Shown piece by piece: positions 20,801-60,000 of a stretch of 64,000 nt of DNA. A program made the translations under genes and the position numbers. The stretch's first letter is position 1, and each line of letters opens with the position of its first letter. Origin of the DNA: Lytechinus pictus (taxonomy: Eukaryota); the NCBI RefSeq assembly GCF_037042905.1, contig NC_087254.1, positions 32,240,001 to 32,304,000 of the forward strand, given 5' to 3'. The notes beneath the pieces were generated by a model. It was not told where the DNA came from. It ran no database searches and was given only the letters and a program-made list of their open reading frames with translations.

Positions 20801-23800
20801 AATATCTCATAAAAATTTGAAAGAAATATGGGCTTTCCTGGAAAAAAACCCTTGGGCAGTTCTTTTCAAATTTTAAAAAGAAAAAATCAAATCAATGGTA
20901 TCCCATGTCTGCGCACCCATTCACTTTGCACACGATTCAGTGATTTTGATGAGAAAGGCTGCATTTTCTGGCCGTCACATGGAATGCAAAAAATCACTAT
21001 TTTTCCAGCATTTTGAGTCAGATTTTTAAATGAATATATTATCTGTCATAATATATTGCATGTGTAAAATTTGTGTTCGTTGCGTATCTTCTTTTACTAG
21101 AATCGCGCAGATACGCGTGTGCGCAGACCAGGGGGACCACGCAGACTTGGATGAACTTGCCATACAGTTTTGTGAAGTAGCCATAAGGCTTTAAAATCAA
21201 AATTTTAAATTCATCCGACTGACCGGACAAACTACCCCCCCCCCCACCATCTACATACGCATGATAAAGTCTACATGATGATGTAGTTTTTTAATATCGG
21301 TTGAATTGGTCTAAAGACTCTAAAATGCCAATTTGTCCAATTACCAGCTCGTCTCCTATCATTTGCTATCCGCATGGTCTAATTGCCATTTCTTCCACCA
21401 CCATTTCGTCTTACATGTATAACCAGCTTAATAGTCCAATAGCCATTTAGTCCCTCATGGCATTTTACCCTTTGGTCTATAAATTGGACAACATGTAAGT
21501 TATAATTGGGTGAAATGAATGAAAATAAAATGAACATAGACCAACTGGTTATGAGACCAAATGTTCATAGACAAATTGGAGATTGGATGCAGATGAGTTG
21601 GTATCTGTGACTGTAAGGTTAATTTTGCAGGATAGACCGGAAGTGGTGCATGATTATTTCTCTTCCCTACAATAATTATCATGATGATTTTCCCCCTTTT
21701 TAGCACAGTAAAATAAAACAGATTTATCAGAACTACTGTACAATACATGTGGAAATGATATTGGTCTTGTACATGTATGTCAAACAATAATTTGATGAAA
21801 TATCAAATTACTCAAACTATTATATTTCACACAGGTGGAATTTCATATGTGTTCATGAGTCCGGAGACAGTATTTGGACGAGGTTTCAAGCTTCTTGATA
21901 GCAGCTTCGTGAAGGAGAACTTATGTGCAATTGTTGTAGATGAAAGCCACTGTATAGTGAAATGGTATGTTTTTTTTCCTGTTCCTTTATTAAAATGAGA
22001 ATTGATTTTTCTTGATTGTTGCATCATGCAGTCAAAAGATTAAATGGGCAATCCAAGGCTGAAAATTATCAGACAGATTAACATCTGTCAAACAATGAAA
22101 ATTTCATCAAAATTAGACAAAGAACAAAGGAATGAACAATATGTACACTGTACAGTATTTACTCAATATTGATATTGAATTTGTAAAAGAATCTTATTTT
22201 CGTTTGATCAACTCTGGTGCACAAGTTATGAAATGGGCATAGTTCTACTTTTTTTTTTCTGCACATTCAATTTCAGGGGACAGAACTCAGATAGACTGAA
22301 AGCCTTCCGTAGTGAATATGGACGTCTGGCAGAACTGCGTTCCATGGTGCCATCACAGATACCCGTGGTCGCCCTTACAGCCACCTCTACTATCGCAACA
22401 CGGAAAAACATCTTGACATCGTTGACAATGACGCAGCCAGCCTTAATTACCCTGTCCCCTGATAGGAAAAACATTAAGTACAGTGTAATGGATGTTCCTG
22501 AGAGTGACACTTCATGCATATTTGCAGAACTGTGCAATGAATTGAAGAGAGATGGCAGACAGACTGCCAGGACCATCATCTTCGCCCGCTCTCACAATCA
22601 GTGCAGCGATCTGTATAAGAGTTTTAAGAAGAAGATTAATGATGTGAATTTATTTGCAATGTTCCATCTTACCACAGAGGATTGTCGCAAAGAAGAAGTG
22701 CTTAAGTCATTTGGAGATGAAAACGGTTCCATCCGGGTGTTGTTTGCCACGATGGCATTTGGAATGGGAGTTAATTGTAGAGGAGTTAGGAGAGTGTATC
22801 ATCTTGGCCCTCCCGAGGACATCGAAGATTATGTTCAAGAAAGTGGACGTGTTGGACGAGATGGAGAGGATAGCCATGCAGTACTGATTCTGTTCAAGGG
22901 ATGGAACCGGTGTAAAGTTTCACCAAAAATGAAGGAATATGTGAAGAACGAGGAGATATGCAGGAGGAAGTTTTTGATGGAAACATTTGAGGAAGATGAT
23001 AGAACATCATGTAAAATTATTCCCCATTCATGTTGCGACATCTGTGCTCAAAAGTGTGAATGTAGGGTTGATGATGCCCATACCATCCCCTTTAAATACT
23101 GTGATACAGTTCAGTCCCAGTCCCAACACATGACAACTTGCAGGGATGTGTCGGATGAGGAAAGAGAAGTTCTACTAGACCAGCTTCTGTTATTAAGAGG
23201 TGAAGTTCTTGCGCGAGTGTCTGGGGCAGGTTACACCTTGGCAGGCGCAGATGTGACTTCTGGTATACCGATCAGTGAAGTCGAGGCTCTGGTTAAGAAT
23301 TGTGACAAAATTGACTCGCTTAGCACTTTATGTAATCGTTTTAGTTTTTTTGGTCATGAGGAAGAAATTTGGATTGTTCTAGAGGATACTTTACCCCCAT
23401 CTCAAACTTCTCAATCCATTGCATTACAAGAATTACACCCCACAGTAATTGATGATATAATTGATACAGATGAGTCTGATACAAATGATGAATATGCAGA
23501 AGCAGTTCTCATGTCAGATGCAGAATCTGATAATTAATTTGGATTGTGGTTCATTCATGGACTTTTCCCTTAAGGATATTTGAATCTTAAGACAGTGAAA
23601 CTGTATTTCTAAGACATTATTTACACTGATGTCATGTATGTCTTGTAATGTTATAGCCCTTCAAAATTTCAGTTCAAACATTCAGATTTAATTGGGAGGG
23701 TTACTTTACCGCATTTAGCATTCAACATACATCATTGCTGGTACGTTTTCAATTTGATACATATGTTGCATCATTTGGGTATAAAGGCTGTATGACGTCG

Positions 23801-26800
23801 CAATATTTATAAATACAATGGTAATATAATGGTAAAGTATATTGCATAAATTTTGTGCTAATTTGGCTTGATAAAATACTCATTGATGTGAAAAAATTTG
23901 CATGTACATGTAGTCAGGTGAAATGCTAATGTTGTATGTATATGTTTGCGAAAATAATCCACAGCAAACTGTATGCATGTATTGTGTTAACACTTTGATT
24001 GCTCATACATTTTTGCATTACTCTAGAAAGGTTCATAAAGCTGTAAATCTGTTTTTGATAAATACATTATGATTACACTTTATATGAATTGAATTGTACC
24101 TGAAGAATGAGTATAACAAGCATGAAACTGAAATCCTTTAAAACTTTTTAGCAACACTAAACATGTATATAATGAGCAAGCTGGTGATGTCATTGATCCA
24201 TTTTTCTTTTGTTTTTTTTTAAACATAAAACATTATTCATATTTATACAAATATATAGCTGTGTATTTATTGTAATTATGTAAGATTTACATGTATGCTG
24301 CATCTTTCAAGCTATGTATTCATCCCCTTCAGGAGGAAAGGTAAAATATTGTTCATTACACACATTCATTCAAAAATACAATTTTAAAAAGGATCGCAAT
24401 AAGTTTTATCATGCAGATACATGTGTGTGATATAAATGTTTCACCTGTAATCATTGTTCAAGTTAAAGGAACAAACCTGTACATGTACATGAAATGAAAA
24501 TTCTATTTCTTTTGGTTATGTACATTGCAAACCGGTACATGTATTTGGCCTTTTTTTTTAATGATGAAAAAATATGGCACGCATTATGAATTTGCCCCTT
24601 TTATAAAGAAGTGTGTATTTTTTGGTACACTTTAAATTAACAGGTGGTTAACAGTGGAAAGAAGCTACATGTATGGAGGGATATGTTTGGTGAGATTTAC
24701 CTGAATTTTCAAGTGTTTATGCATTAGACGATTACAAGCAAAAGTGGACATTTTCAAAAAAATTATATTGGCTCTTTCTCAAATCTCGATCATTTTTCTA
24801 TCAAAACTCAAATGGAATTTCATAATACAAAGGGGAACATTATTACATGTAGCCAGAATTTGTTTTTCTTGTAAATGTATCTCCTTTCTGTTGGATAATC
24901 TAAAGGTCATCATTTTAAATCATATTGTAAGAATATTTTCAAATATGAGTTCATTTTACATTGCTTGTATATGGATATTCCAGATGTCACTCTGTAACCG
25001 TCACTCCATACATGTAACTGGGTATAGGTTTACGTTTTAAGTCGTAATTGACAAATACACCAATTTTTAATGTAATGCAGCATATTATGCTAGAACAACA
25101 GAGAATCCAACCAATAACTCAAACTTGTGATAGCCATTTAAAGTTCAGAGTTTGAGGGATATGTTTTATCCTCAAAAATGCATATCCATTATATATGTAA
25201 CCATGTTTAATAATATTCATACAGTATCTCATTAATTGAGTGGATCGCTGAAACAAATGTTATTACTTGTATTTTTAAAGTGAGTTTCAGGAAGTACTGT
25301 AGGGCACCATTTCTTTGCAAATGACGATTTAAATATGGGTGATAAATTTGTTTGAATGCTAAGATTTGTTTCTGAATATCACTCTGTTTGTTTGGAACTG
25401 CCCCATTTATACATGCACATTATTAAATGTTAAGTTCTACCAACTTTTCAGGCAATGAAATAAATGGAATATTTAATTATGTGAACTTCCGTGTTACAAT
25501 CCTAACATGTTATTGGCAAATGCATATTTTTCATGTTTCTGATATTTTGAGTTTTGGGATTCCGACTTGCAGTTGCATCATCTGGACTGGATGGTGAAGG
25601 AGAGTGGGGTTGGTATGGGCACATGTTGAGGAGGGATGGCAGGCATGTTACAAGAAGGGCTTTTGAGTTTGAGGTGGGTGGTTCGAAGGGGAGATGATGT
25701 GGAAGAGGCAAGTGGAGAAGAGTAGGAGGGTTGGGTTGAGGATGAAAGATGCACTGTATCAGGCAAAGTGGAGGGAGGGGGGTAAGGGCCATTGCTGCGA
25801 GTGTGAGGTGAATCAGGCCATACCTGTTCACAGGGACAATCCCGGATTTAAAACTTACTACTAACATTATCTGTATAACCCATATGTTTAAACTTCAAAT
25901 CCACCCTACCAGAAATGGAAAGAGAGAAATCAAGGAACACAATTAAAGGGGTACTTGAGGCTGAATCACCCGTTGTGATTCATGAAGATTTTGCAAAATT
26001 TGAATATTTCTTATTTTATAATACAAAAGAAAGAGTAAGTATATAAAAAAACCATCTCATTTGCCTATCACTATATTGTACATACATGTACATGTAAAGC
26101 TTTTTATGAAAAATAAGCTGAACTTTCAAATGTAAAAACTTTTTTTATTGAAATCAGATCTTGACAAAATTTTCAGGATTAAGCTTGTTTGATCTTTCTC
26201 TTTGTATTCATTCCCATTTTTATGCCATTGACATGCTCTTTAACCCAAAATAGACTGGGCAATTTCGACGCCAAGAAGACGGGGGGGGGGGGGGGTTGAT
26301 TAATCCCCCCTTATGATTTCGGCTGTCAGTTGCACGATCGCAACAAAAATTGGCACGCTCTTTACCTGTGGCATAATCTACACAAGTATAAGATCCAATT
26401 CAGCAAAAAATCTCATTGCTAATAAATTTTGCTAATCTATGCATAAAATCAAGTTTGCTCTAATTAAATAATAATGCTCATAAAATTCTAACTTTTGGTA
26501 CACAGACTCTTTATAGGCATCTGATCAAATGTGCTTTAAAAGAATTTCAACATCACTTTTATTTTCTTATTCAATTTATTATTTTCTAAATTTATTAAGT
26601 ATTTCTTTGTCTTAAGACTTGTTTTTTTATTGTTTTTTCATTGAAAATTGTCTGGGACTTTATTTTGATGGAATTAATTGATTTTAATCGGTAAAATGAA
26701 AAATAATGACACATTAATTAATTTTTGTTAAAAACACTTTGCATTGGATTTTTTCCATTTAAAAATATTCTGTATCCTGGCATATTTTCTCCCATCCTAA

Positions 26801-29800
26801 TATGTTTTCCATATTATTCCATCATTTTTTCATCTACCTAACCACAAAATGAATCTGAAGCAAGACATGTACTGTAATCCTGTCTTCAAAATGACATGCA
26901 CATTAAAAACTCAAACTATGTCACAGAACAAATTGAACAGAGGCAGTGTGATAAAGTTGATAAAGGTTCATCTTTCTGTACCATTTAATAAAAATATGAC
27001 AAATGCTTCATCAATATACAGGTACACCTTGGTACAAACTATGTTATGAATTGTCCTCATCTTTTTTTCACTGTTTAAAATGGAAAAACAAATGTTATTC
27101 CATGTAAAGGAAGACAAATATGAATACGGATAAAATTACTGACAAGATAAAGAGCAATAAGAGAATACTGTCATTCCCTTTGAAAGTTGTCTACATATAT
27201 TGCAATCATATCATGAATACTGATGGAGATACTGTTAAGAATCAGTGCACTAACAAGAACAATTGTACATCCCAGAGAATATAATATTGCAGTTCTTTGT
27301 AAAGTTTGGTAAAACATATTGCAAAAAAGATGATGATAAATACGTATAAAGAGACTGACAAGATAGAGCAAATTGCAAAGGCAATAATATATGTACATCT
27401 TCAGTAGCATCACCTTTACTTTCTTCATGCATGTATAATAGAAGATAATAACCCTTCATATCTACAATACCAATCAACAGATGTATGTGAAATATGATAT
27501 CAGTGAAAAAACACAAAATTATGGAAGGAAGTGCTTTGTTACAACTTTTTGGCATCAAATGAAATGTTTATATTGCATAAATATCAGCTGTATATACTGT
27601 ATGCACATAATCACAAATCTATACATGTATAACAAATTTGTTAGCTTTACAAAATTTACTGAAATTGAAAGAACACAAATTCATATTAACTTTGTACTGC
27701 ACGAAGGGGGGGGGGGGGCTTGCAAGCCCTCCTCTCAACATTTTCTACGCGTTTCACTTTGAAATTTTGCTGAATTTCTTAACTTTGAATCTTTTGAAGT
27801 AATTTTTTTTAAATATTGGACTGTGGTCATGGTGCTGGGCAGTCTTTTGAATGTAAGTGCCCATCATTCTGAAAATGGCGTAAAACCATGATTCTAAATG
27901 TATATCAAAGTGTATACAGAGTTTTCTCACCTAACATGATTGTTTTCAATTTAGCTAAAAATAAATAGGATACAGAGAATTTCAGTAAAATAAATCTTCC
28001 AAAATTAACAAGAAATGTATGTATAAGAAATTTATGAAACAATAATAGTATGAGATAAATTATTACATCCTTTTTTTGCCAATCTGTGTTGACTCATGAA
28101 ATCCTAATATATATAAAGAAAAATCATCAGTGTTAACATGTACCGAAAAAGAAAGAGACAACTGAAAGAGCATTTTAGTGAGTAAAGACTAATCAACTAG
28201 TAATAGCCTCATCTTATTTGCTTTAATGAAATTCCAGTGATGCATGGCAAGGAAGTAGACCTACGTTTTGATTGACCTTTAGAGTGTTGTCCATTCCATT
28301 TGAAATCAGTATACTTGAATCATGACGACAACTGTTGTACAACTAAAACATTTAAAGCTAAATGATAATAGTTGCTGTAAAACACTAATTTCGTGAGAAA
28401 GTCTGTAAAACCAAGGTTAAGTAACTATATCATCGTGGATGTAGATCTGGTACAGTTACATAAACTGAACTTCGTGAAATCATAAACTCTAAGCTGAAAT
28501 ACGATCACACTGAAGATCGCCAACACAGATAGGCACACGTGGGACAGTGTATTTTTATTGCTGGAATAAAGACCCGATGAAAGTGACGGAATCCGCGCTT
28601 ATTTTGCTTATTACTCAGCAATTACACAATTTCTTCCAGAATCCTTTGGCACATATTTTTTATTCATACAAACAGACACTTAGGTGGTCATTATATTAGA
28701 TTCTGTAAAGTCATTTTGAGATTGTTACCAGAACTGGAATTTATCTTTAATGTCAATTTGAGAAGTAAAACTATTTTCAAATCTTGTACATTTACAGATA
28801 AATCAAGCTTTTTTAGGACAAACAATTTAAATACATTTTCCACGAGGAATGCTTCAGCGCAACCAAGAATGTGAAATGATGAAAAATGTTCATGTTGGCA
28901 AAATGGCAAAAAAGCTAAGTGTCACATATACATCACACATTGCCAAATAATGATAAAGCTTTATATCACTAAATAGAAGTTCAAAAAATAAAATACAATA
29001 CATACATATGCACAGTTAATGTATATCCAAAGATAAATTTCTTTTATGAAATCAACTTCCAATGAGGTGCTCGGGTTGCAGCAAATAATTCCTATCACCT
29101 ACTCAAATGAAACATTGCTTTAAGAAATAAACCAAAAGCTGATGTGAATGTTTAAATACTAAATTTGAAAAATTCCTTTAAAAAAAAAATAAGTGAAGCT
29201 GTGTGCATTGTTCACTTGGCTGGTTCATATCATATACACACCTTTAGTGGAACAGTCAGTTATTCTTGCTGATACAATTAAAAACACAGTTATAAATAAT
29301 CTTATATATATATATCTATATATATGTATATAAAATGTCATACAGAAAATATAGGAACTATTCTCATACTTGTAATGTTACATGAGTTAAAAAATTTCTC
29401 AGATATATCATGCAGAATTATGTTCTTGAAACAAGCCGTGAATGCATGTACCATCATCAGCCATATGTCACCAACTGTTCCCCTGCAATGTAAGGCGGCT
29501 TTTCATGTTAAAGAGCATGCACTTTACAGAATATAAAATGAAATGTACTTTCATATAAATCATGGACACCAGTATATACCATGATAATATAAAATTTTCA
29601 AAATAGAAAAGATAGTTGTATCATGACAATTTTCAAATGTCTTTGTTATGTATAAGATAGTAGGATACCTGTAAGCATTTCACTAACATGTCATTAACAC
29701 TGTAAATAAACATCTACCAGCCAAGTAATAAAGGTAGGTCAGATATGAAGAAAAATTCATTAGAAAGCAAAGTCTTTCAACTTTTTTGACATCCATGATC

Positions 29801-32800
29801 TCAGACTAGCTAGATTGAGCCTGGAAAGAGGGTTCAGAGGAAAGGAGGGGAAAGCATGATGATGCCTCGAATCCTTTTCAGAGAAGATTTGTTCTCTGTG
29901 CATGTGATGGGCCAATCTCTGCACGTCTTCACTCAGATCTTTTTTCTTGTGTGCACCCTTATACGCCCGGGTCTGAGTACCTTCATCCACCTTGGTAAGA
30001 ATTTTTTCGGAGGTTTGTGCTGAATGACTGACTCTCGCGACACTCGCCTTTGAGACTTTACCATGAAATTGGCGGTATTCTTCTTTGAAGATGCGGTTGT
30101 GGTGTTCATTTTCTCTGTCTAGTTCAACATTTGTGTCTTCTTTCCCCACATTGTTAACCACTCTATTCCAAATGAGTTGGTGTGCCAATCGTGGGGAAAG
30201 AAGACACTTTACCTGCGCAAGTAGCCTCAGACTGTGTAGGGCATACTTAGTCTTCCCTTCTAGCTTAAAGTAAAGCACAAAGTACTTGTACAGCCTGATG
30301 ATACGAGCACCATCTCCATATTTTCTCGCATCTTCGAAGTCCATCCACAACAAACACATACCAAGGGCTGCCGAGCTGTAATTAAACATCGAATCCTCTG
30401 TGTTGGTGCTTGTAGTTTGTTTGCTGGGCTCGTTTGAATGTTGTTGCTCTGTATGTTTCTGTAGACTTCTCTGATGAACGTATTCTTTGTTACAGAGTGG
30501 GCAGACGAATTTCGAAGCTCTGTCAAAATGTGGGCCCTCATGAATTGCATACCTGTCCACCAGACGGCCCAGTTGCTCTTTGACCTCATCCGCAACATTT
30601 GTAGAATCCTTGTCAATTATATTTCGAGTTGGTTGTGAATTAACATCTTCCATGCCAAAATGATGCAATGCTGCTGCAACAATGAGGGACTCTGAATATC
30701 GTGTCAGGAACTCGACTGACGCATTGACATCTTTCAACGGACTTGCAGGAACATTCGTTGCCCTGAGAAAATTCCTGGAAGCGTAAAGTGTCCCAGGGTC
30801 TCTAGCTGACTTTGTAGAGTACAACACTTTCCATATAACCTGAAAGAACAAATATTCATGATTGAATTAACTTCATATTTGATGCAAGTGGACATGCGTA
30901 AAAAAACAAGAGCATTGGTTGACTGTAATGTGAAGATGTGGGTATCTATCTACCTATCTGTCTACCTATCTATCTATCTACTGTATCAATCAATCTATCC
31001 ATCCATTTTTTATTCNNNNNNNNNNNNNNNNNNNNNNNNNNNNNNNNNNNNNNNNNNNNNNNNNNNNNNNNNNNNNNNNNNNNNNNNNNNNNNNNNNNNN
31101 NNNNNNNNNNNNNNNNNNNNNNNNNNNNNNNNNNNNNNNNNNNNNNNNNNNNNNNNNNNNNNNNNNNNACCTAGCTAACAATTACTGCATGATTGTGAGA
31201 GAGCTACGGCCTTTCATGTCTATAATCGGACAGCCCTTAACTATTCACTTACAAGTTTTGTCCATTGATTACAAACTAAAATTAGAAAAATGTACGGGAG
31301 GGTCATCAGTGTGTTTTAGTATAATTATTTGCAAATTCTGTGTGAATTTGAAGTAAAAAAAAACACAATCACTTTACATTCCAATAAGATAACAAACGCA
31401 CAACAATAGAAATGATATGAAGGGATGAGATATTAACAGTCTTCATTATTGCAGTTGTATAAAATCATACATATTTTAAAGTGAAAGATTGGAGAAGAAA
31501 TATGAAATCCTGGTGAGATGATTTTGTGAATGAAAATTGTCTAAAAACTGACTAATTACTACAGAATTTCTCAGTCTTTTTATGTTGTGTAATATCTTAA
31601 TGTCAAATATCAGTGTGGTAATCATCACATGTTTAGTAGCTAAAAAATATATTACACCTGTAATTTCCTTACCGCCCCCCCCCCCCCTATTTGCCGATTG
31701 AAAAAGTCATTTGAATATTTAAAAAATAAGAGTAAAATAGAAAAAGAGTATGGCACTAAACTAAACAATTACTACTCCTTTAAAATTAGTAGAAATTGTA
31801 AAATAGTATAACTATTTTATACCTCTAGAAAATTGGCCATGGCATGGAAATCATCAATGACTGGAATGACGCCTTCCCATTTGCTTGCAGAGGATGTGCT
31901 GTCCTGCCTGTCCTTTTTTGCATTGACCTGTCTTTCACAAGTTAGTAAGTCTCCTCCGCTGAGAGTTGGGATCTGCACATTGCTGTCCTTCATCATAGGG
32001 ATGTAAGCATTCATCTTGTCGAGGATGGCAACAATCCCTTCATGAGTATTTTCATTTTCTGTGATGACGCCCAAGTTAACCTGATGGAAATAATATCAAA
32101 CAAATAACACATCAAGCATGCATAACAGAATACATGTATGATTTTCCTACATTATTATTAGATTCAATACAACATACATGCATTAAAAATGACTGACAGT
32201 GTGACTTCTACAAAATCAAGCCTATTTTAAGTAGGCTATGATTCTTTAATATTATATTTGATATTACTTCAAACCTTCCATGTGATATCCATTGGCAAAT
32301 TACCTTACACTGAAACACACTACTCAGAATTAAATTTCATTTTCATACCTGAATTTATAAATTTGTAGGAGACATCTTTCGCATCTGGCAAATATATTTA
32401 TTGGCTAAGTTTTCTTATGTGTGCATTGTATCAAATGCTACTTAAAGAATGATTAAACACTTACAACAGTGCTCTTCTGTTTGGTCTTGTCCATGTACTC
32501 ATGTTTGATTTTCGTCTCAGTAAACTCCGCCATCCATGAGAGTGCTGGTATGTTTTGTGTCACTACTCGAGCCACAAGCGTTGCCCATTCATCTCTCAAA
32601 TGGTTGTTATCCTCTGGGGAGGGCAGGAACATGTTCAAGGAAGCATCCTCAACATTCATAGCAGGTGCGACGTCTGACAGGCTGAAATCAGCTATTCGGT
32701 TTTTTACCGCGAGGAATTGGTAGAAGTGCAGGTCCTGCCCTTTGTCCTCCATGGATGCTTGCCTTGGCTTGACCTTCACATCTACGTTGTCCCCGTTCAG

Positions 32801-35800
32801 GATATATCCTGGATGACGGCTGGCATTCAGAGATTCCAGTTCACTTGCTGCAAGAACATCCCCCTTGGCCAGCCTCTCTCTCAGCTCTTTTTCAGATCTA
32901 GCTTCCTCCTCCACTTCCTCCTTCCACTGCTTTACTTCGGCATCAAAGCCCTCACCTAGGTGTGTCTGCCGCCTTAATGTACTTTTGTACGATACTGACA
33001 GTCCTCTCCCCTGAAGACGAGCAAATGTCTTTGACGACGCTCCCCCTCGTTTGAGGGCCAAAGATGTAAGGGTTTGGGAAGCATTCATCTCCCTGTTTCG
33101 AAGATATAACACTGTCCCTGCAGCTGCCAATACTCCAGGGATTATTGTGCCAGAAGACTTTGATTTTCGTTTGTCCAACCTGGGATTGGTGGCAGCAGCC
33201 TGAAGGCATGTCAGAAGAACTGGGGCTTTTTCCTTCAATTCTGCTTCTTGTTTATCGAAAGAAAACTCCTGAAAACCAAAAAATTATCAAGATATTTAGA
33301 ATCAGTACTTCATGAAAATCTGGCTGAAATTTACAACTGCATACAGTAAATACCAGCCTATGTGACATTACAATGAAAAGCATATTGGGTACAGCTCATA
33401 AAATTGAGTTCTTGTTCCCCCCACACATGCTCCCCCTCCCCTAGAATTTTTGAAAACTGAAAAAAAAAACGTATAGAAAATGTTGTCATGAGCATCATAC
33501 TCTAGATGTAAAGTGCTTCAAAACAGCGTTATCACTCTTCAAATTATGAAAATTTTCTTGTACAGTGACTGTTAGCTCCCAACACTGTTAATCTCTAACA
33601 CAATCTTCCATGACATTATATGAAATTCAAAAGTTTGGCTGTAGGTTGAGATAAATAAATGATGTGTTCAATGACATAACATGGGTCTTAAAAATCCAGT
33701 GTTCAAGTCAATATGCACAAATTATTCTTCTTGTGATTCAAGTTGTAATTTTTTGTTTTAGCAAGGTACCGGTATGCATCCTGCATGTCCATAATTTTAA
33801 AAAGTGCTATTCAGCTTGCACTTTGCGCTCACATCAATTGTTAAGTCAGATACCCATCCTGTTCATGGCTACAAAATGTGTTTACAAACAGCGGCCAACT
33901 ATCATCTCAGAATATCTTTTACAATTACAACTCACGAATCACCATCAAATTATTTATTTGATGAGGTATTATGATTCCTTGCAAACATTCCTTAAAGGTA
34001 GAGTCCACCCCAGAATAATGTTGATTTGAATAAATAGAGAATATCAAACTAGCAAAATGCTTAAAAATTCATCAAAAATCAGATCAATAATAAAGTTATG
34101 AGATGTTAACATTTTGCTTATTTTTCATAAAACAGTGATATTCATATTCATAATTCAATGACATGAAAATGAGACAGTTGATGATGTCCTCTCTGTATCT
34201 TTTATATTTGATTTTTTTACAGATTCGACAATAAAGACCAAATAGTATTAAACAATGCTAATTCCACATGTTCATGGAGGAATTAATTGTTTTACTTGAC
34301 AATAAGGAAAAAAAATATGATTATATCATATTTCATATAATAAAATGAAAAGAAGAAACGAGTGGATGATAGTCTCCTCATTTGCAAACCGACCAGGATG
34401 TGCTTGAAACTATTTTGTAAATTAAGCAAAATTTTAACATGTCATAACTTTCTTGTTTTACATCCGATTTTGATGAAATTTTCAGTGATATGGTTGTTGG
34501 ATTTTTCTCTTTTTACTCAGATCAACTTTTTGTTGGGGTGGACTTGTCTTTTAACAAGTCCCTTTTTCAAGTCAGTAGGGCCTATATTAAAAATTTTAGC
34601 TTGTGCTTGTTATATGAAATAAGCATAAATGATCTGTTGCCCTCCATTTGCAACCCCCCCCCCCCCCCGTTTAAAAATCATGGTGCGACTGTCTTTATGT
34701 TGCATCTGAGTGTATATGTATAAGACGCTCATACAAATGATATTACTAATAATCAATAAATATTATATTCTCATTTCGTAAAACACTTTACGACGTAAAT
34801 ATTCTTTTGGAGTGAACGCCTCAAATATGCTTTAAAAAACAACAATATACTTACTTGTAAAGCTTCCTTGCTTTTGTTTCGGAAAGTTGATTGGTTGTTC
34901 TGTATGCCACACAGGTAGGAACATTCTGCACTGATCTCCTTTGACAGACACTCGTTGAATTCACTACGTAGAAGTGGTGATGATGTCACATGGTGAACGA
35001 CAGTGTGGAGATCACCTCGATCCAAAGCCGTATGAAGTTCATCTATCATTACAGAAGTTGGCGGAGTGGGTTTTGCCAAGTCCTGTAATGTGAGCAATGC
35101 ATGGATATGTAATTAAAAGTTTCAGAATTACTTTAACCATGCATTAGGGTAGCACTATTTCATTCATGACTATGATTTTAAAAAAAAAAAACATGGAAAT
35201 ATTTTATGACAATCTCAGTTTTATTTGTGTCCATCAAAGACGTAAATCCTTGCGTCACACCTAGGCTATTCATGGAACGGGGGTGATCTATTGTTGCACC
35301 CCCCCCCCCCCCACACTTATAGCATGATGTCATAGGTTTAAGCACATGGTGTTAAAGTATGAGATATTACGCAATTCTATGAGGTAAATTTAATTTAGCA
35401 AGGGGTTATGGTGACAGTTATTTAAGATGATTAATTTGTCTGTAAGGAAATGGATTCTCAATTAGCAGAAAAGAAAATTAATGAACAAAAATTCTTAAAG
35501 TGACACGTACCTCTTCTCTTGTTTTTTCTTTGAATTGGAGCTGCTTTCTCTTGACTGTTGGGGCACATATGATCGGATTAACTGACAAAGTCAAACTCAA
35601 AGGGCTTGTTGCTGCTGTGGACTTTCCAGTTCCAGACCGTTTCTGCTGCCTCATCAATTTGGATGGGCTTTCAGTGATCATCCGCTTAACTCGTCCTTCC
35701 GGTAGATCTTCATCTTGATTCTTTGGCTTTGCAATCATAGTTTTCAGCTCAAGTGCTGATGGATCATCATTTGATGTTATTTTGTTTACTTTATTTTTGC

Positions 35801-38800
35801 ATACACCACAAATCTTCTTGCACAAAAAATCTGTGTTTCTTTCAGATAACTCATTTAACTTTGAGGAGATTTCATCGTCAACAATGCAATATTTCTTAAA
35901 CAAAATTACGTTTCTATTGCACACACAACACACACGGTCAGTTGCTCTGGGACGTCCTCTTCCCGGCCGTATCACGACGGGTTTTGTAGGGGTAACGTTA
36001 GGTACGTTGACCTTACCAGCAAGCAGCATCGTGACATGGACTCGAAATAACTTGTTGATAAATCATACTGTCTCAGCTAACTAATGTCCAATAATTTATC
36101 AGATCGTCTTGAAAAAAGCGTGGTCCATCCAACACAAATATACATCCAAAACTTTCTATAATTCAGTGGAAAATCTATATTGAAAGTGAAACATCAACAA
36201 TAGACAACATGAAAACTCCAACTCAATCGAAAGTGTTCACACACGTGTTCGCAAAATCAGCTGTGTTTTGGAAATACATTTGTCTTAGTCTTTATCTCTG
36301 TACGTATTTCCGTCTAATATTTGACACCCGAACAACATACAGTACTTTTTAGCATCTAGTCCATGATTTCACTCTGTTTTCTTCTAGAGAGTGACTTTAT
36401 CAAAGACTAAACAAAACTTCCAAGACGGAGGGAAAGACTCGTCCACAATTGAGCAAAGAGACGGGGGTGAAAATAGGGATACGTTTCATATTATTCTTCA
36501 AAATAGATATTCAATACAATTCAACTTTAATTTCTTTAATGCTAGATTTTGTAAAAGTAATGAAAATACTGTTTTTGTCAGAAAATGATTTTTCAATGCA
36601 TTAAAAAAAAAAAAAATCTTCCACAATTAAATCGATCCCCTGCAAAATAGTGGACTATTCCAAACCACGGACGAAACAGCTTTGACATTTCATTGGTCAA
36701 TTTACGAGGTGAACGTTAAATATTCATGAGCTCATCTATATTCATTAGGAAGACGTGCCTCATGAATATATAATTCGGTACAGATGTCCAGAGGCCCTGG
36801 CTCGCGCCAGGCTAATTCGCTTCGCGAATTAGGATATCCCTCGCTTCGCTCGGGAAGCAGCCAGGGCCTCGACCAGAGGCTAGCACTCCACCAACATAAC
36901 CAGGCAGTCCCTGCCTTTCTTTTCAGGACCACAAAGTAAACAGTATCTTGTTGCATTCTACACCAGTCATCAAATCCCATTCCCAGTCCTGAAGCTAAGT
37001 ACACATTCATGATATTTCGGTTGAATTCAACCAATCTACACAATCATAACGTAATGTACTTGCCTATCGGTAAGGTTCTTTTCCACAATTAGAAGTTAGA
37101 ACACATACAGGGATCATCATGATCACGGAAAAACAGTAGTCAAGACTGAGAAAACTGTGTGCATTCCTCCCTATGTCAGCCAGCAATCAAACTGAAAGCA
37201 TGGACTTACTACAACTAAAACCAAGGGCCATGCTGGATTTTTTGAGCCAGTATGCTTGCTCAGTTCATGTGATCTTTTCTTCTAACCCTGCTATCCCATA
37301 ATAACTTATTTTATCCATCCCATCATGACAGGTCCACCTTCCCAAATGATGTTGACCAGACCACAATTCTCAGGGGGCACGATGGAAGAATGTTAATGTC
37401 TTTTTGGGAGGGCTCCCTTAGCTATTCTCCCAACCACTCCCTGACTAAGACCCCGTTCTCATTACACTTTCTAAAACTAGCTTACTAGAAACCAGTTTGG
37501 AATATCGCTTTGCTAGCTTTCCCATTTGATCACCTGAATGTGGTTTTCAAAATTACTTCACGTAAAGCGGTCTTGTTGCTATAAGAACGCTCTCAGTGGG
37601 GTGACACCGCATCATCATAGGCATTCTACACACATTGTGTAGAGTAGCACGCACTAAATGTGCGAAGATCGCTTTCCGAAGAATGATTGTCTCCTCACGT
37701 ACGCTAAAACCAGTTTCACGAGGCAAAGTGATCTTGAACTACATCGCGAGGTGGTTTTATGAACCGGTTTGGAAGATCACTTCCAAGATCGCTTCGACCG
37801 TTAAAGGACAAGTCCACCCCAACAAAAAGTTGATTTGAATAAAAAGAGAAAAATCCAACAAACTTAACACTGAAAATTTCATCAAAATCGGGTTTAAAAT
37901 AAGAAAGTTATGACATTTTAAAGTTTTGCTTAATTTTACAAAACAGTTATATGCACATCTTGGTGGGTATGCAAATGAGGAGACTGATGACGTCATCCAC
38001 TCACTATTTATTTTGTATTTTATTACGTGAAATAGGGAATATTCTATTTTTCTCCTCATTGTCAAATGAACAGCGATTAATTCCTCCCTGAACATGTGGA
38101 ATGAGCATTGTTTAATACTATATGATTCAGTCAAGTTTGTCCTCATTGTCAAATCTATAAAAAATGAAATATTGTATAATTCAAACAATAAAAAAAAAAT
38201 AGTGAGGGACATCATCAACTTTCTCATTTGAGTTGTTCATATCACTGTTTTGTGGAAAATAAGCAAAACTTTAAAGTGTCATAACTTTCTTATTTTACAT
38301 CCGATATTGATGACATTTTCAGCGTTTTGCTAGTTTGATTTTTCTCTATTTATTCAAATCAACATTTTTATGGGGTGGACTTGACCTTTAAGCTAGTTTC
38401 CAATAAACTAGTTTTAGGAAGGTAGTGAGAACGGTGTCTTAGTCTTCAGGCACAGACCCTAATTAAAACTTTACTCAACAAGATGGTCATAAAACCAACT
38501 TACCTCCATGATCTAGCACAATACAACTTGTTATAATGGTGATAATTGCATTTTTGTATTAAAAAATGCAACATACATGTAACACATAGTTCAATTCAGC
38601 CCCGGGCCATGAAGGCTTGAAATTCAGACCACTTCAGTGTGTTTTGACAAACCGAGGGCTTGTGCCTGTAGATATTTGCTAGACTAAAGTCGCCCCCCCC
38701 CCCCCCCGGGAGGGGGGGGGGGCAGTCAAATATATTGCTGTACACACTCGTGAACAAAGAAACGCGTTTAAAGGGGTGTTTTTTTTTTTCAGTTTTGGAC

Positions 38801-53659: not shown

Positions 53660-54386
53660 GTTGTCTATAGATATGGAGTCAATCTCAAACCTGCATCTGA
53701 CCAAAAGGTGACAAAAAGGACATCTATTACTTTAATATTGCATATTAGCAACTGTTGAAGGAGTAGAATCTATGTACTCTCATAAGATAACCTGAAATCT
53801 GCATTCCTGACCAACACTAAACTTGCCCTAAGCATTAGTGCTTCTATCTTCTAACTAAATAAACAATGAAATGTAAATCTGAGACACTAGTTTAATTTTG
53901 AGAAATATTTGATTGAAAGGTCCAATTTTTATAAATGGAAAAAAAATCTAAAGCTATGCCGGTCCTAAAGCTACACACCACTCATCGCACATGCAATTTC
54001 AATGGCTAAATGCATGCTCTTTCTGTGGAAATGCAACTGCAGTGTAGCAAAAGATTCCTATTCATTTTTCTATGTACAGAGGCAGTGAAATCAAGAGTGT
54101 TCGAAAAACACAGCAGGATTCTCATTTTAGTCAGTTTTGTGATATTTTCTTCTTGGTCAATGATCTTTAGAATATTCATCACAAATTAGAGTAAGACAAG
54201 ACAATATGTTCAAATATTAACATTGTCATAGTTTTTATTGTTTGTAAACAAATTTCAGCATCGAAATAATGCGGATAACTCTGGTCCCGCTCAGATTTTA
54301 CAACCAAATTATGTGGATATTATCCGCATAATTGGGATTGTGAAAGGGGCACTATTATTTAATGAAGGGCGGTTCAAGACTCCAAC

Positions 54387-55234
54387 TAGACAGGAATAAC
54401 CGTCGTTTCTGGGGATTTATTCAACAATTTCTGACATTTTACTGTAATCCCCATTTACCGACGGTAGGGTGTACGTGTGGGCTCGCATGTGTTCTCATTC
54501 CCTCCCTTTTGTCAATTCACAGTCCAAAGTTTGATGTAATTTTACACATCGAATTTACAATCTAAGGTCTTAAGGATGTATAAACAACAAACTTTTAATT
54601 GATGATATTCCAACGTTTAAATACTTTAAACGATATAGATGAAAAAGGCATGAAAAATATACTTTACCGATGTTTAATTGGGTTGAACACGATAAAAATG
54701 GTCAAAATGGCAGCCAAACTATAAAATATTTACAAACGAACGTCAACAATCACGAATGTGATATCGATATTGCTTTCGATATTATACGATCTGCTCCATA
54801 TGCGAACGAAACCGAAGATAAACGATACTAGTTATACTAGTACGAGTACTAGTTATAATCGCGATATATCGATTCGAGACATTAAGTTAATAACGACAAT
54901 GACGTCATTCAAGATGGCAACTTGCAAGAAAAACCGTCAGGTCAGGTGAAAATGTCTTAGATGACAGATTTCTCAATCATCCAGAGGATTTTTTTCAATA
55001 ACTCCGGCCCAAGGTATGCAATTACTTAAGTTATATATATTTCCCTGATAATGGAAACCATGAAACTTTCAATTTTGCTTAAAAAACAGTTTTAAATCGC
55101 GATCTATAAAACGCTAGTTCACTATACGTTGGCTGTAGGTACGGGGCCCCATCCCCTTCAGTCTATGTATGGTGAGTGGAGCCAACGTAGTTCAGCGGAA
55201 CAACCAAAATACAGAGACTGAAGCTTTTGGTCTA
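54387..55234 (-). mobile_element. 848-bp non-autonomous TAG...CTA element with 9-bp TSD (AcademH-like)
   Basis: TSD GACTCCAAC at 54378-54386 and 55235-55243; termini TAGAC.../...GTCTA; its last ~65 bp match the adjacent 450-bp family. Confidence 0.82.
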
Positions 55235-55317
55235 GACTCCAACATGTCCAATGATGAAGAAGTATACGTACTTTAATATGTCAAAGTATTTTTTAAAAAC
55301 ATCATCATGGAGTCCTC

Positions 55318-55766
55318 TAGACCAAAAGCTTCAATCTCTGTTATGTTGGTTGTTCAGCTGAACTCCGTTGGCTTCACTCACCAAATACAGAGACCGAAGT
55401 TCTAGCGCGATCTGTACAGGGGACTCAATGGCCATATGTTTATGTACTTAAGATCGGATAAAACGGGGAAGTGAATTTGCGCGACAGCCGAGGTAAGTCA
55501 CTGTTTTTGTTCCTTTTAACTTGATTTTTCTCCGTTTTTTGGCAATTAATGCCAAGAGGGAATATTAATTTGCATTTTGGTCACGTTCATTTTCAAAATT
55601 TTTATTCATTAAAGACAAAAATTGAAGAGCCCCGACGGGGGGATTTTGCATTGCAAGTCTTCTAATGGTGGCTGCACGATAGCGAGCCGTCTGTGTATGA
55701 GGAGAAATTAAAAAAAAAAAAAAAATGTTAAAAAACTCCTCAAAACAGACGGCTGCCAGCTGTCTA
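55318..55766 (+). mobile_element. ~450-bp non-autonomous TAG...CTA element, copy A1
   Basis: TAGACCAAAAGC...CCAGCTGTCTA, flanked by GGAGTCCTC on both sides. Confidence 0.88.
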
Positions 55767-55775
55767 GGAGTCCTC

Positions 55776-56236
55776 TAGACAGCTGGCAGCCGTCTGTTTC
55801 GAGGAGTTTTTTAAACATTTTTTATTTTTTTTTTATTTCTCCTCATACACAGACGGCTCGCTATCGTGCAGCCACCATTAGGGGACTTACAATGCAAAAT
55901 CCCCCCGTCGGGGCTCTTCAATTTTTGTCTTTAATGAATCAAACTTTTGAAAATTAACGCGACAGAAATGCAAATGAATATTCCCTCTTGGCTCTTGGCA
56001 TTAATTGCCAAAAAACGGGGAAAATCAAGTTAAAAGGAACAAAAACAGTGACTTACCTCGGCTGTCGCGCAACTTCACTGCCCTGTTTTATCCGAACTTA
56101 ATACACATAAACATATGGCCATTGAGTCCCCTGAACAGATCGCGCTAGAACTTCGGTCTCTATCTATATTTGGTAAGTGAAGCCAACGGAGTTCAGCTGA
56201 ACAACCAACATAACAGAGACCGAAGCTTTTGGTCTA
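55776..56236 (-). mobile_element. Copy A2, inverted, at the same target site as A1
   Basis: Flanked by GGAGTCCTC (55767-55775 and 56237-56245). Confidence 0.88.
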
Positions 56237-56343
56237 GGAGTCCTCAAGACTACACCCGCCAGCAGGAGACAGATCCCACCGTGAGAGCGGAGCCGGAGAG
56301 CTCCGAGTCGAGTCGAGTCCACTCACTCAAGCATGCGAGGACT

Positions 56344-56791
56344 TAGACCAAAAGCTTCGGTCTCTGTTATGTTGGTTGTTCAGCTGAACTCCGTTGGCTT
56401 CACTCACCAAATACAGAGACCGAAGTTCTAGCGCGATCTGTACAGGGGACTCAATGGCCATATGTTTATGTACTTAAGATCGGATAAAACGGGGAAGTGA
56501 ATTTGCGCGACAGCCGAGGTAAGTCACTGTTTTTGTTCCTTTTAACTTGATTTTTCTCCGTTTTTTGGCAATTAATGCCAAGAGGGAATATTAATTTGCA
56601 TTTTGGTCGCGTTAATTTTCAAAATTTTAATTCATTAAAGACAAAAATTGAAGAGCCCCGACGGGGGGATTTTGCATTGCAAGTCCCCTAATGGTGGCTG
56701 CACGCTAGCGAGCCGTCTGTGTACGAGGAGAAATTAAAAAAAAAAAAAAAAGTTAAAAAACTCCTCGAAACAGACGGCTGCCAGCTGTCTA
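56344..56791 (+). mobile_element. Copy A3
   Basis: Flanked by GCGAGGACT (56335-56343 and 56792-56800). Confidence 0.88.
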
Positions 56792-56800
56792 GCGAGGACT

Positions 56801-57014
56801 TAGACCAAAAGCTTCGGTCTCCGTTATGTTGGTTGTTCAGCTGAACTCTGTTGGCTTCACTCACCAAATACAAAGACCGAAGTTCTAGCGCGATCTGTAC
56901 AGCCTACAGGGGACTCAGTCAATGGCCATATGTTTATGTGTATTAAGTTCGGATAAAACAGGGCAGTGAAGTTGCGCGACAGCCGAGGTAAGTCACTGTT
57001 TTTGTTCCTTTTAA
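56801..57014 (+). mobile_element. Copy A4, truncated, in tandem with A3
   Basis: Starts TAGACCAAAAGC directly after the TSD; similarity ends near 57014. Confidence 0.8.
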
Positions 57015-60000
57015 GCTCTGCCCGAGTTGCTACACTGGCACTGGCAAACGATGTCGGCGGCCGGTGCGGTGGTGACGCCGCGTCGCTTGCCTTCAGCGAC
57101 GTGCGACAAATACAAACGAGATCGAGAGACGAGACAAGAAGAATTTTGAGATAACAATATATGAAGAAATAATATCTAGCACTGGCCTCTAAGGTTGATC
57201 TAAATTACTTGTTATTCCCTTACCCGTACTAAGTGAATCACTCACACACGCATGCGAGCTTAGCGAATGTGATATAAAAATGAAGAAAATCCGGAGGGAG
57301 CTCGGAACTTTGCCATTTGCGTGCAGTCTTGAAAATCAATTCTTGTTTATTTACGAAACTATGGTGTCTGTAGCGTAGCAAAAAGAAAAATGAATGTATA
57401 CCCTCATATATCTGCAGCGCAGGCGTTGAAAAAGGTGAAAATTACTGGAAAATTTTTGACAGACATATTTGCTAGGTTCTCGACAAACAGAGTTCTCACA
57501 TGAGTCACATTCGAATAAGTTTCTATTTCTTATAAATCTGTTTTTTGGGTCTCACAAAATACATATCATTTTACGAGTAATTATTTTGTTTCATATTTCT
57601 TGTAAAAAAAAAGAAACTCGCAAGCTAGTAATATTATAATTTAATTCTGATCCCCGGTTCTGATCACAAGAAAAACCTATTGCAAAATAATCTTTTTTAA
57701 ATAAGAGCAAAATTTCGTGACGAGATTGCTTACGTACCTGAGTGGGCAGCTCTGCGGCCTCGTACTTCCCCTAACATAGCTTAGATGCCCCCAACAACAA
57801 CATCAACATAAATGACCAAAAATTGGCAAGTAGAAAACAGGGGGGAGATAGGTGGAAAACAGAGTGAGAAGGGCGGAGGCATACTTGGATTATGATTGGA
57901 CGGGGGTGTGAGGCTCGGGGCTTGAAACCCTTACCAATTTCTAAGGATAATTTGATCGTGGGGAACAGGCACCCATGCATGTCTAAGGATTTTCTCAAAG
58001 TACACACCTATGCATGCCTAGGATTTTCATTAAGACCCATTTTCCAAATTAGGAAGTCCAGAATCTCGTGCAGAATCTTTGTTCTCCGAACATCATCAGG
58101 CCGAAATTACCGGGTAAATCCCGGGGCAAATCCTCGCGCCACGGCTGCATGGGAATGTGATATCCATGCAACCCAATTATGCCGGGGCTGGCAGCCTTCG
58201 CCAAGAGGGGGGGGGGCATATTTTTTTTTTACTGGCCACATTTTCCCGGATCGCGGCCGCTCGAAGTTGATATTTGTTTGTTTCTATGAAGGAGTAGTCC
58301 TAATAGTTCTTAGCTTTATTGTTATAAATCAACATGAATATATAATAATCACATAAACCTTACTTAAATCACGAAGCTAGCTCTATGCTTAAATTGTGAG
58401 CGCAAAGCGCGAGCTATTTTTTTATTTCATGTATTTTGTCCTAAAATTTAAACGATATCTGTATCGAACTATATAATAACCGCGAGCGCGAAGCACGAGC
58501 AGACATTTTTAATTTACGTCTTTATCTGATCAAAAAAAGGATATGTTAACGGCTGCTTGCAGTTAGCCATGAAGACGTTACATATTTCAACAATCAAATA
58601 ATGCGATCGCGAGCTGAAAATTTTGAAATTTCTACCTGAAGAATGGAAATTCTAAGCAATCTTTGAAATCGTGAAAATGGTTAACTATATAACTAAACAA
58701 TAATGCGAGCGCGAGAGGAAAATTTCGAGATTTACACCTAAAAATATGATACTTTATTCATGTTTTGTAATTTATTAAAAGGATGAGTAATTGGAAATCT
58801 TCCTACATTATATAATGCGAAAGATTTACACCTAAAAATATGATACTTTATTCACGTTTTGTAATTTATTAAAAGGATGAGTAATTGGAAATCTTCCTAC
58901 ATTATATAATGCGACCGAGCGCAAAGCGCGAACATAAATTTTGGATAATGTGATCTGAAACTGTACATATATAGGCTCATAGGCCCGAATTCACAAAGGT
59001 GGTTTTGAAAACCCACGGTAGAGTCCATGGTTTATGCAGATTTCCTGTATAAATTACGCTTAATTTAGCGCGTATCGGGCGCGTGTATAAAACATGTCCT
59101 ATGCTGATGCGCGCATTTGTCACAGTGCGCCAAATTGACGCCTGTTACCATGGTTAGATACGCTATTTTATTCATGAGTCCACTGTTTTTAATCATGAGT
59201 CCACTCTTCAAACAGTGGACTCATGAATAAAATAGCGTAAATTTTACAGAGCACTTTCTAAGATTTGTAAATCAAACAAAATTAAGTTCGATTTCCGACC
59301 TGAAATATGTTTTGTATATTGACTTCAAAATTTGATATTTAAGCTCCATATTGAGCAAGATGTGTTAGCACCTAAAAGGCAATGTGAGCGCGAAGCGCAA
59401 GCGAAAATTTTATATAGTGACATGATATGTTTTTCTAAAAATGATTTTAAGTCTTCCCCTCATTTTATTTTATTCACTCGTCTTCCTCCTCTTATGTTGA
59501 TCCGGCCTTTTTTTATCCTCTTTTTCCCATTCTTTTTTTCTTTCCCTCTTTTTTTTTTGCTCAACCAATAGGGGGAAGGCCGGGCCCCTCCCCCCTGGAT
59601 CCGCCTATGCAATGTGCCACATTGTAAAAAACATGCATAAAAATTATGTACGATACAGTATACGGTCGGCCGAGTGTGCCAAATAGGCATAGAAAAAGTA
59701 CCCCGGTGCCCATTGCTATCGTACTAAGATGTGGAAAGACTACAGGTAGAATCTACACGTCCCGGGTTTCCGGCTACTCGTACTCTCTAAGGGTCTTTTC
59801 CTGGGGATTCTTATAGATACAAGTATTTGGGGCATTTTTTTCAGAAACGGACCCATGTCTATAAGGTTTATTCAGTTGAAAAATAGGACCCATTGCTAAG
59901 GATATCTTACAATAGCAAGACCCATGTCAGAGGGTTTTTTTTTTTGCGAAACGACCCACTGGAGCGGCACATCCCCGTATGCGATATACACGAGTACCCC

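What the first reader, a model, noticed from the sequence alone, without database searches (positions are those of the whole stretch)
55309..57014. Same target site used twice, at two sites: stacked TAG...CTA elements separated by exact 9-bp TSDs
Seen: GGAGTCCTC-[A1 forward]-GGAGTCCTC-[A2 inverted]-GGAGTCCTC, then about 90 bp later GCGAGGACT-[A3]-GCGAGGACT-[A4 truncated]. A1 and A3 share one variant (tacttaagatcggataaaacggggaag) and A2 and A4 share another (tattaagttcggataaaacagggcag). These are therefore separate insertions of two subfamilies rather than simple duplication. TAG termini with a 9-bp TSD match AcademH, but the ends differ from the autonomous copy here. Inference: the transposase re-targets the TSD next to an existing end, building arrays.
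Basis: partly seen in the sequence, partly recalled or inferred. Interest (0 to 1): 0.75.

Follow-up and report, generated by a model that had tools for sequence, protein, structure and literature searches.

The report
Transposons stacked on one reused insertion site
Small non-coding jumping genes in this reportedly sea-urchin genome repeatedly land in exactly the same 9-base target, forming stacks; this matches double insertion as described for the fruit-fly P element, so it is a clear but ordinary example.

Summary
Window 55309-57014 holds GGAGTCCTC-A1(+)-GGAGTCCTC-A2(-)-GGAGTCCTC, then 89 bp later GCGAGGACT-A3(+)-GCGAGGACT-A4(+, truncated). An 848-bp related element with its own TSD lies 83 bp upstream.

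The family is about 449 bp with TAGAC...GTCTA ends and a 9-bp TSD. The genome holds 2991 exact 15-base heads. A GTCTA end lies exactly 9 bp upstream of 100 of them, against 2 at 10 bp and 3 at 8 bp.

In gap scans of 0-30 bp, 53 of 89 end-to-end junctions have a spacer of exactly 9. Outer and inner 9-mers are identical, and arrays of three elements occur.

Array neighbours are no more alike than random copies, and orientations fit 1:2:1. These are therefore independent insertions, not duplications.

No special end-guided mechanism is needed. The family prefers a weak palindromic target, RGCWN|N9|NWGCY, and its own GTCTA end scores like a typical native half-site. Each TSD copy therefore stays a top-ranked target. 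Insertions also cluster about 40-fold within 1.5 kb.

This is the double-insertion process published for the P element (PMC5932611). This scan already reached the same reading at another locus of this genome (s1-311601). AcademH membership is plausible but untested, because no autonomous partner was found.

The parts
54378..54386 (.). TSD GACTCCAAC, left copy, of the family-B element
   Evidence: The same 9-mer lies on both sides of the element (L001 570-1417, which is window 54387-55234).
54387..55234 (-). Family-B non-autonomous element, 848 bp. It shares the first 82 bp (the head) with family A at 88% identity but has a different tail ending ...TTATTCCTGTCTA.
55235..55243 (.). TSD GACTCCAAC, right copy
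55309..55317 (.). TSD GGAGTCCTC, copy 1
55318..55766 (+). A1, a complete family-A element of 449 bp, subfamily variant 1, with TAGACC...GTCTA ends
55767..55775 (.). TSD GGAGTCCTC, copy 2, shared by A1 and A2
55776..56236 (-). A2, a complete family-A element of 461 bp, subfamily variant 2, inverted, joined tail to tail with A1
   Evidence: Identity to A1 is 91.6% by BLAST and 94.9% over aligned columns.
56237..56245 (.). TSD GGAGTCCTC, copy 3
56335..56343 (.). TSD GCGAGGACT, copy 1
56344..56791 (+). A3, a complete family-A element, variant 1, 97.6% identical to A1
56792..56800 (.). TSD GCGAGGACT, copy 2, shared by A3 and A4
56801..57014 (+). A4, the 5' part of a variant-2 family-A element, cut off at about consensus position 202. 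Its right TSD copy is lost.
   Evidence: It is 100% complementary to A2 over 96 nt (I3).

Best explanation
These are arrays built by repeated, independent cut-and-paste insertions of non-autonomous DNA transposons into one and the same 9-bp staggered-cut site. This is double insertion. The elements have TAGAC...GTCTA ends and a 9-bp TSD, so they are probably mobilised by an AcademH-type transposase.

The family has a weak palindromic target preference, 5'-RGCWN | 9 bp, with S at the first and last base | NWGCY-3'. After an insertion, each of the two TSD copies keeps its native flank on one side. On the other side it gains the element's terminal GTCTA, which has C at -3, W at -2 and R at -5. 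That end scores as well as a typical native half-site, so both TSD copies remain among the best targets in the neighbourhood.

Insertions of these families are also strongly clustered within about 200 bp to 1.5 kb. The next element entering such a hotspot therefore very often hits exactly the same 9 bp, in either orientation, giving t-E-t-E-t.

Shown here: reuse of the identical 9-mer, independence of the neighbours, random orientation, the target consensus, the score of the element end, and the clustering. Inferred: that the consensus reflects transposase preference, that clustering comes from a host or chromatin hotspot, and that the enzyme is AcademH-type.
For: The 9-bp TSD was verified in about 30 of 30 full copies sampled and in 91 elements over 70 loci.

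Spacer scans with a 0-30 bp gap gave these counts at exactly 9: head-head 20/29, A-tail to head 17/34, tail-tail 6/9, B-tail to head 10/17.

GTCTA lies upstream of a head 100 times at 9 bp, 2 times at 10 bp and 3 times at 8 bp, among 2991 heads.

The same 9-mer sits at inner and outer positions in 17 double arrays, and in triple arrays L031, L049 and L057.

Neighbour identity averages 0.946 against 0.960 for random pairs, and no neighbours are identical.

A-A junctions are HH:HT:TT = 7:13:6, which fits 1:2:1 with P = 0.96. Arrays mixing families A and B are common, with 15 junctions.

The target model comes from 53 independent sites. C at -3 is 74%, G at -4 is 60%, W at -2 is 90%, and total information is about 6.6 bits.

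The end GGTCTA scores 2.84 bits, against a native median of 2.69.

The leave-one-out landscape gives likelihood ratio 452 (median 63) at spacer 9 and 2.6 at spacers 10-30, while about 43 to 1 is observed.

Without clustering only 1-10 reuse events are expected, but at least 53 exact ones are seen. The missing factor matches the roughly 40-fold local clustering: at least 14 extra copies lie in 29 x 3 kb where 0.3-0.4 are expected.

Array sites tend to match the motif better than single sites, 6.46 against 4.90 bits, one-sided P = 0.08. The same trend is reported for P-element dimers (PMC5932611).
Against: The target model rests on only 53 sites and is partly fitted to noise. It over-predicts the 9-bp peak by about 4-fold.

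In the first 100 head flanks of the genome, the consensus looks somewhat weaker by eye than in my sample.

The cause of the short-range clustering is unknown.

No haplotype with 0 or 1 copy at this locus was seen, so the order of events is inferred.

The autonomous partner, and hence the enzyme, is unidentified.
Confidence: 0.72

Rival explanations
1. End-guided retargeting. Transposase bound to the end of a resident element captures an incoming transpososome. It places strand transfer at the very bond it would cut during excision, so the flanking TSD is reused regardless of its sequence.
For: One strand-transfer position of a reuse event coincides with the junction between the resident element's end and its flank (inference from DDE chemistry). 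The short-range clustering of copies within 200 bp has no demonstrated host cause and could reflect tethering. Cognate-end sites are used about 1000 times more per site than other GTCTA pentamers.
Against: That roughly 1000-fold factor is reproduced by multiplying the retained half-site plus TSD score (mean likelihood ratio about 90) by the general clustering factor of 10-40. No excess remains for a specific end effect. Clustering is equally strong at non-abutting distances of 64-194 bp, where an end-positioned active site cannot act. Array sites tend to be better motif matches, which a sequence-blind mechanism would not predict.
Confidence: 0.18
2. Arrays arise by duplication rather than insertion. 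Possible routes are mis-annealing at the 9-bp TSD during gap repair after excision, unequal exchange, or replication slippage.
For: Direct head-to-tail arrays sharing one TSD are what annealing at the TSD during synthesis-dependent repair would give (inference). One locus, L054, does contain a 2033-bp tandem duplication that includes an array.
Against: Half of the A-A junctions are inverted (7 HH and 6 TT against 13 HT). Many arrays join different families. Direct neighbours are 88-98% identical, the same as random pairs. In the window, each array pairs two different subfamilies.
Confidence: 0.04
3. The arrays are an assembly artefact, produced by collapsing or mis-joining repeat copies.
For: No spanning read could be examined.
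Against: More than 50 loci follow the same exact rule, with a locus-specific 9-mer repeated at the inner and outer positions and divergent partners. Mis-assembly does not produce that pattern.
Confidence: 0.02

Closest known systems
P-element double insertions (tandem and head-to-head dimers) in Drosophila melanogaster: McGurk and Barbash 2018, Genome Res 28:714 (PMC5932611), which cites Tower et al. 1993 for head-to-head dimers
   Same: Dimers keep one TSD-length spacer in the junction. They are explained by insertion-site preference plus hotspots. Junction sites match the target consensus better than single sites. The target consensus is palindromic and extends beyond the TSD.
   Different: Here the TSD is 9 bp, not 8. 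The superfamily is different (probably AcademH, not P) and the host is a reported sea urchin. The elements are MITE-like. Both orientations are seen at the 1:2:1 ratio in an assembled genome. Arrays mix two families and reach three elements. The element's own terminal pentamer is shown to score as a typical half-site.
AcademH DNA transposons (Kojima 2020, Mob DNA 11:15, as quoted in PMC10045372)
   Same: The TSD is 9 bp (AcademH is described as making 9 or 10 bp). The ends are TAG...CTA, as in the intact AcademH copy at window 19752-36882.
   Different: Beyond TAG there is no sequence similarity of the ends to that copy (TAGACCAAAAG against TAGCCTCTGGTC). No coding capacity is present. The partner is not identified.
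Tandem dimers of bacterial insertion sequences with a TSD between the copies (Dalrymple 1987 and Prudhomme 2002, as cited in PMC5932611)
   Same: Two copies are separated by a TSD-length spacer.
   Different: Those dimers are active transposition intermediates with a reconstituted junction promoter. Nothing suggests that here, and inverted arrays are equally common.

Membership tests
TE dimers or arrays formed by double insertion at one target site (sensu McGurk and Barbash 2018) | The junction between the two elements holds exactly one TSD-length spacer. | tested here: met
   53 of 89 junctions in the 0-30 bp scans have spacer 9. GTCTA upstream of a head: 100 at 9 bp, against 2 at 10 bp and 3 at 8 bp.
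TE dimers or arrays formed by double insertion at one target site (sensu McGurk and Barbash 2018) | The same sequence flanks the array on the outside (t-E-t-E-t). | tested here: met
   Seen in 17 double and 3 triple arrays, and in the window's first array.
TE dimers or arrays formed by double insertion at one target site (sensu McGurk and Barbash 2018) | The partners are independent copies, not duplicates. | tested here: met
   Neighbour identity 0.946 against 0.960 for random pairs. Arrays mix families and subfamilies.
TE dimers or arrays formed by double insertion at one target site (sensu McGurk and Barbash 2018) | Junction sites follow the family's target consensus and match it better than single sites do. 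| tested here: inconclusive
   6.46 against 4.90 bits, one-sided P = 0.08, with 16 array sites and 37 single sites.
AcademH (Academ superfamily) | TSD of 9 or 10 bp | tested here: met
   9 bp in 91 elements. The definition is quoted from PMC10045372.
AcademH (Academ superfamily) | Mobilised by an element that encodes an Academ DDE transposase plus a helicase and shares the same termini | not tested
   The partner was not found. The window copy has different ends. A candidate open exon lies at G000:C5:55936779-55937861, 41% identical.
AcademH (Academ superfamily) | Terminal sequence similarity to a known autonomous AcademH | tested here: not met
   Only TAG...CTA is shared with the one autonomous copy in hand.

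The most novel reading that the evidence does not exclude
The short-range clustering and TSD reuse are driven by transposase, or a transpososome, tethered to resident copies. That would be a homing-like, end-guided target capture in a never-studied superfamily. It would seed tandem arrays and could be an entry route to satellite DNA in echinoderm genomes.
Probability: 0.15. Interest if true: 0.6.

Novelty: new member of a known kind. Interest (0 to 1): 0.3.

Why it matters
This is a clean, assembly-level and quantitative example of TE arrays arising by repeated use of one target site, outside Drosophila and in a different, experimentally unstudied superfamily. It provides a target-site consensus, RGCWN|N9|NWGCY, for these TAGAC-ended families. 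It also shows that an element's own terminus can regenerate its preferred target. That is useful for TE annotation, because such arrays should not be read as one long element or as a duplication. It also bears on ideas about how transposons seed tandem repeats. It does not reveal a new mechanism.

Tried and rejected
Tandem duplication or repair slippage is rejected on neighbour identity, orientation and mixed families.

A strict sequence-specific 9-bp target is rejected because TSDs are diverse. The three similar TSDs in the window (GACTCCAAC, GGAGTCCTC, GCGAGGACT) reflect local host sequence and are not a family rule.

Read support could not be obtained. The four runs laid are short contigs dominated by the repeat, and none bridges the array or covers the unique flank 57027-57300.

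The autonomous partner was not found. No long ORF with a transposase lies in the 70 loci. A protein search of the genome gave one intact but different AcademH-like exon, which I could not inspect.

I did not try another route.

The ends of the in-window AcademH family form no 0-30 bp junctions. That is uninformative because its copy number is unknown.

Terminal hairpins were checked. The 28-nt ends fold no better than shuffles, and the 83-nt head folds modestly with z = -2.0, so this is not used as evidence.

No Rfam family and no tandem repeat lies in 54000-57600.

Kojima 2020 (PMC7165386) is not held in the library.

Full report
WHAT IS THERE

- GGAGTCCTC lies at 55309-55317.
- A1 is 55318-55766 on the + strand.
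- GGAGTCCTC lies again at 55767-55775.
- A2 is 55776-56236 on the - strand.
- GGAGTCCTC lies a third time at 56237-56245.
- 89 bp of host DNA follow.
- GCGAGGACT lies at 56335-56343.
- A3 is 56344-56791 on the + strand.
- GCGAGGACT lies again at 56792-56800.
- A4 is 56801-57014 on the + strand and is cut off at about position 202 of the element.

A1 and A3 are 97.6% identical and share one internal variant. A2 and A4 share the other variant and are 100% complementary over 96 nt. An 848-bp element of a sister family (B) lies at 54387-55234 on the - strand, with its own TSD GACTCCAAC, 83 bp upstream of A1. The locus therefore holds five insertions in 2.7 kb. The rest of the 64-kb window holds none.

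THE FAMILY

The window belongs to an 812-Mb eukaryotic assembly.

Family A is about 449 bp and non-coding. It starts TAGACCAAAAGCTTC and ends CCAGCTGTCTA. Only TAGAC is inverted between the two ends. Both ends have the layout TAGAC-N11-GTCT.

About 30 of 30 full copies sampled have a perfect 9-bp TSD of varied sequence. 91 TSD-verified A or B elements were found in the 70 loci fetched. The genome has 2991 exact 15-base heads of families A and B together.

Family B shares the 82-bp head but ends TTATTCCTGTCTA.

The intact AcademH element in the same window (19752-36882) has a RecQ-type helicase exon and a DUF6589 transposase exon. It also has TAG...CTA ends and a 9-bp TSD, GCACTCCAC, but an unrelated terminal sequence. 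AcademH is described as making 9- or 10-bp TSDs (PMC10045372). The assignment is therefore plausible, but it rests only on TSD length and three terminal bases.

IS TSD SHARING MORE THAN CHANCE?

Pattern scans of the whole genome allowed 0-30 bp between two element ends. The share of junctions with a spacer of exactly 9 was:
- head-head: 20 of 29
- A-tail to head: 17 of 34; six of the others are one recurrent 26-bp junction
- tail-tail: 6 of 9
- B-tail to head: 10 of 17

No other spacer length occurs more than twice, apart from that recurrent junction. For the first three scans, P is about 1e-47 against a uniform spread.

With a looser definition, GTCTA lies exactly 9 bp upstream of a head 100 times. 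It lies 10 bp upstream twice and 8 bp upstream three times. About 3.3 are expected from base composition.

In the first 100 heads listed along the genome, 6 have a cognate end 9 bp upstream. Overall, roughly 2-6% of ends, hence perhaps 4-12% of elements, sit in such arrays.

In the array loci fetched, the outer flanks carry the same 9-mer as the junction in 17 doubles. The same holds in triple arrays. L031 has AGCCTGGCC four times and L049 has GGCAGGGCG four times with the order A-B-A. L057 is another triple. This locus-specific logic excludes an assembly artefact.

INDEPENDENT INSERTIONS OR DUPLICATION?

Neighbours in 11 A-A arrays are 86-98% identical, mean 0.946. Their percentile among random between-locus pairs (mean 0.960) ranges from 0.02 to 0.82. 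None are identical, and that includes the five direct arrays.

A-A junctions split as HH 7, HT 13 and TT 6. That fits the 1:2:1 ratio expected for random orientation. Fifteen junctions join family A to family B. Duplication, slippage and copying from the neighbour are therefore rejected.

WHY THE SAME 9 BP?

TSD sequences are diverse, so there is no strict target sequence. However, 53 independent target sites, reconstructed by removing the element or the whole array, show a palindromic flank consensus. G at -4 is 60%, C at -3 is 74%, W at -2 is 90%, R at -5 is 74%, and S at the first and last TSD base is 74%. In short the consensus is RGCWN|S-N7-S|NWGCY, about 6.6 bits in total including small-sample bias.

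The element's own end, GGTCTA, placed at -6..-1 scores +2.84 bits, which is a likelihood ratio of 7. The median native half-site scores 2.69 bits, and 51% of native half-sites score lower than the element end. After an insertion, each TSD copy is therefore flanked by a site about as good as the one originally chosen.

A leave-one-out scan of the sequence next to each resident end predicts a mean likelihood ratio of 452 (median 63) for the site that reuses the TSD. It predicts 2.6 for sites giving spacers of 10-30 and 1.3 for spacers of 0-8. The observed ratio is about 43 to 1 per spacer. The motif alone is enough, and even over-predicts the peak.

The absolute frequency is not explained by the motif. 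Without clustering, 1-10 reuse events are expected genome-wide, while at least 53 exact ones are seen. The missing 10-40-fold equals the general local clustering of these families. In 29 loci chosen only for similarity to A1, at least 14 further copies lie within 1.5 kb where 0.3-0.4 are expected, and most are 64-194 bp away. Multiplying the motif factor by the hotspot factor reproduces the data, so no separate end-directed step is needed.

What makes the hotspots is open. Flank GC is only slightly raised, 0.406 against 0.374.

COMPARISON WITH WHAT IS KNOWN

McGurk and Barbash (2018, PMC5932611) showed that P-element dimers in Drosophila populations carry the 8-bp TSD in the junction. [quoted passage not shown] They cite head-to-head P dimers from screens and bacterial IS dimers with TSD spacers.

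The present case has the same anatomy and the same explanation. My test of whether arrays sit at better sites goes the same way, 6.46 against 4.90 bits, but it is not significant (P = 0.08).

The differences are the superfamily, the host, the 9-bp TSD, the high frequency in a reference assembly, the exact 1:2:1 orientation ratio, the mixed-family and triple arrays, and the measured mimicry of the half-site by the element end.

Another agent of this scan reached the same reading at a different locus of this genome (s1-311601). I saw that note only after my own analysis.

WHAT COULD NOT BE DONE

The public runs that hold words of this stretch are short contigs and cover only the repeats. None bridges the arrays or the unique flank, so long-read and haplotype tests remain open.

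The target model therefore rests on 53 sites. For the same reason the candidate partner at G000:C5:55936779-55937861, an open 420-aa frame 41% identical to the window's transposase exon, was not inspected.

VERDICT

This is a well-documented new example of a known process and is not a new kind of mechanism. Interest is 0.3.

Noticed in passing
window 54387-55234 (-): A complete 848-bp element of a sister family (B) with TSD GACTCCAAC. It has the same 82-bp head as family A but a different tail (...TTATTCCTGTCTA). B is the commonest partner of A in head-to-head arrays (11 junctions).
   Followed up: partly
window 55318-55340 and 55744-55766; same in all copies: The two ends are not a classical inverted repeat, because only TAGAC is shared. 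Both have the layout TAGAC-N11-GTCT. Folding of the 28-nt ends is no better than shuffles.
   Followed up: partly
L031:1121-2010, L049:186-1963, L057:1542-2467: Arrays of three elements, each separated by the same 9-mer (AGCCTGGCC, GGCAGGGCG, GTCTACGCC). L049 is A(+)-B(-)-A(-).
   Followed up: yes
L054:1052-4018 (G000:C11:6013851-6016817): A 2033-bp tandem duplication whose unit contains an A-t-A junction. The outer 9-mers differ by one base (AGTCTTGCC against AGTTTTGCC). Here an array has been duplicated secondarily.
   Followed up: partly
G000:C1:17778696, C8:34241806, C11:7071893, C13:5384588, C28:982001, C28:1132670; L068:1302-1735 and L069:1312-1745: One tail-to-head junction with the same 26-bp spacer recurs at six loci and lies inside a larger shared repeat (98% identical over 434 bp). 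It is a fossil junction that has been amplified as part of a composite repeat.
   Followed up: partly
L049 (G000:C2:19.70 Mb) and L033:1555-1563 (G000:C6:5.936 Mb): The same 9-mer GGCAGGGCG serves as TSD at two unlinked loci. In L033, two elements sit 19 bp apart (9 + 1 + 9), and a near-identical 9-mer (GGCCGTGGC against GGCTGTGGC) recurs 5 kb away. The cause is unexplained: chance, a repeated host sequence, or movement of an element together with its flank.
   Followed up: no
G000:C5:55936779-55937861 (+); also C2:52968986-52969633 and C2:53048951-53049538: Other Academ-like transposase exons with open frames of 420, 519 and 444 aa, at 41%, 27% and 28% identity to the window copy. They are candidates for the autonomous partner of the TAGAC-ended families, or domesticated genes.
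   Followed up: no
runs X1-X18 on window 54300-57300: Words of families A and B occur, at very high depth, in runs filed under five different coded organism labels, while the unique flank 57027-57300 is almost uncovered. The families may therefore be shared by related species.
   Followed up: no
L009:2582-2602, L018:1947-1960, L033, L052, L057: Short motifs TAGCCAGGNGGC and CAGTAGAGGCGCACG recur in the flanks of several A copies, sometimes directly after the TSD. They may be ends of further TAG-ended families in the same hotspots, or simply good matches to the NWGC flank consensus.
   Followed up: no
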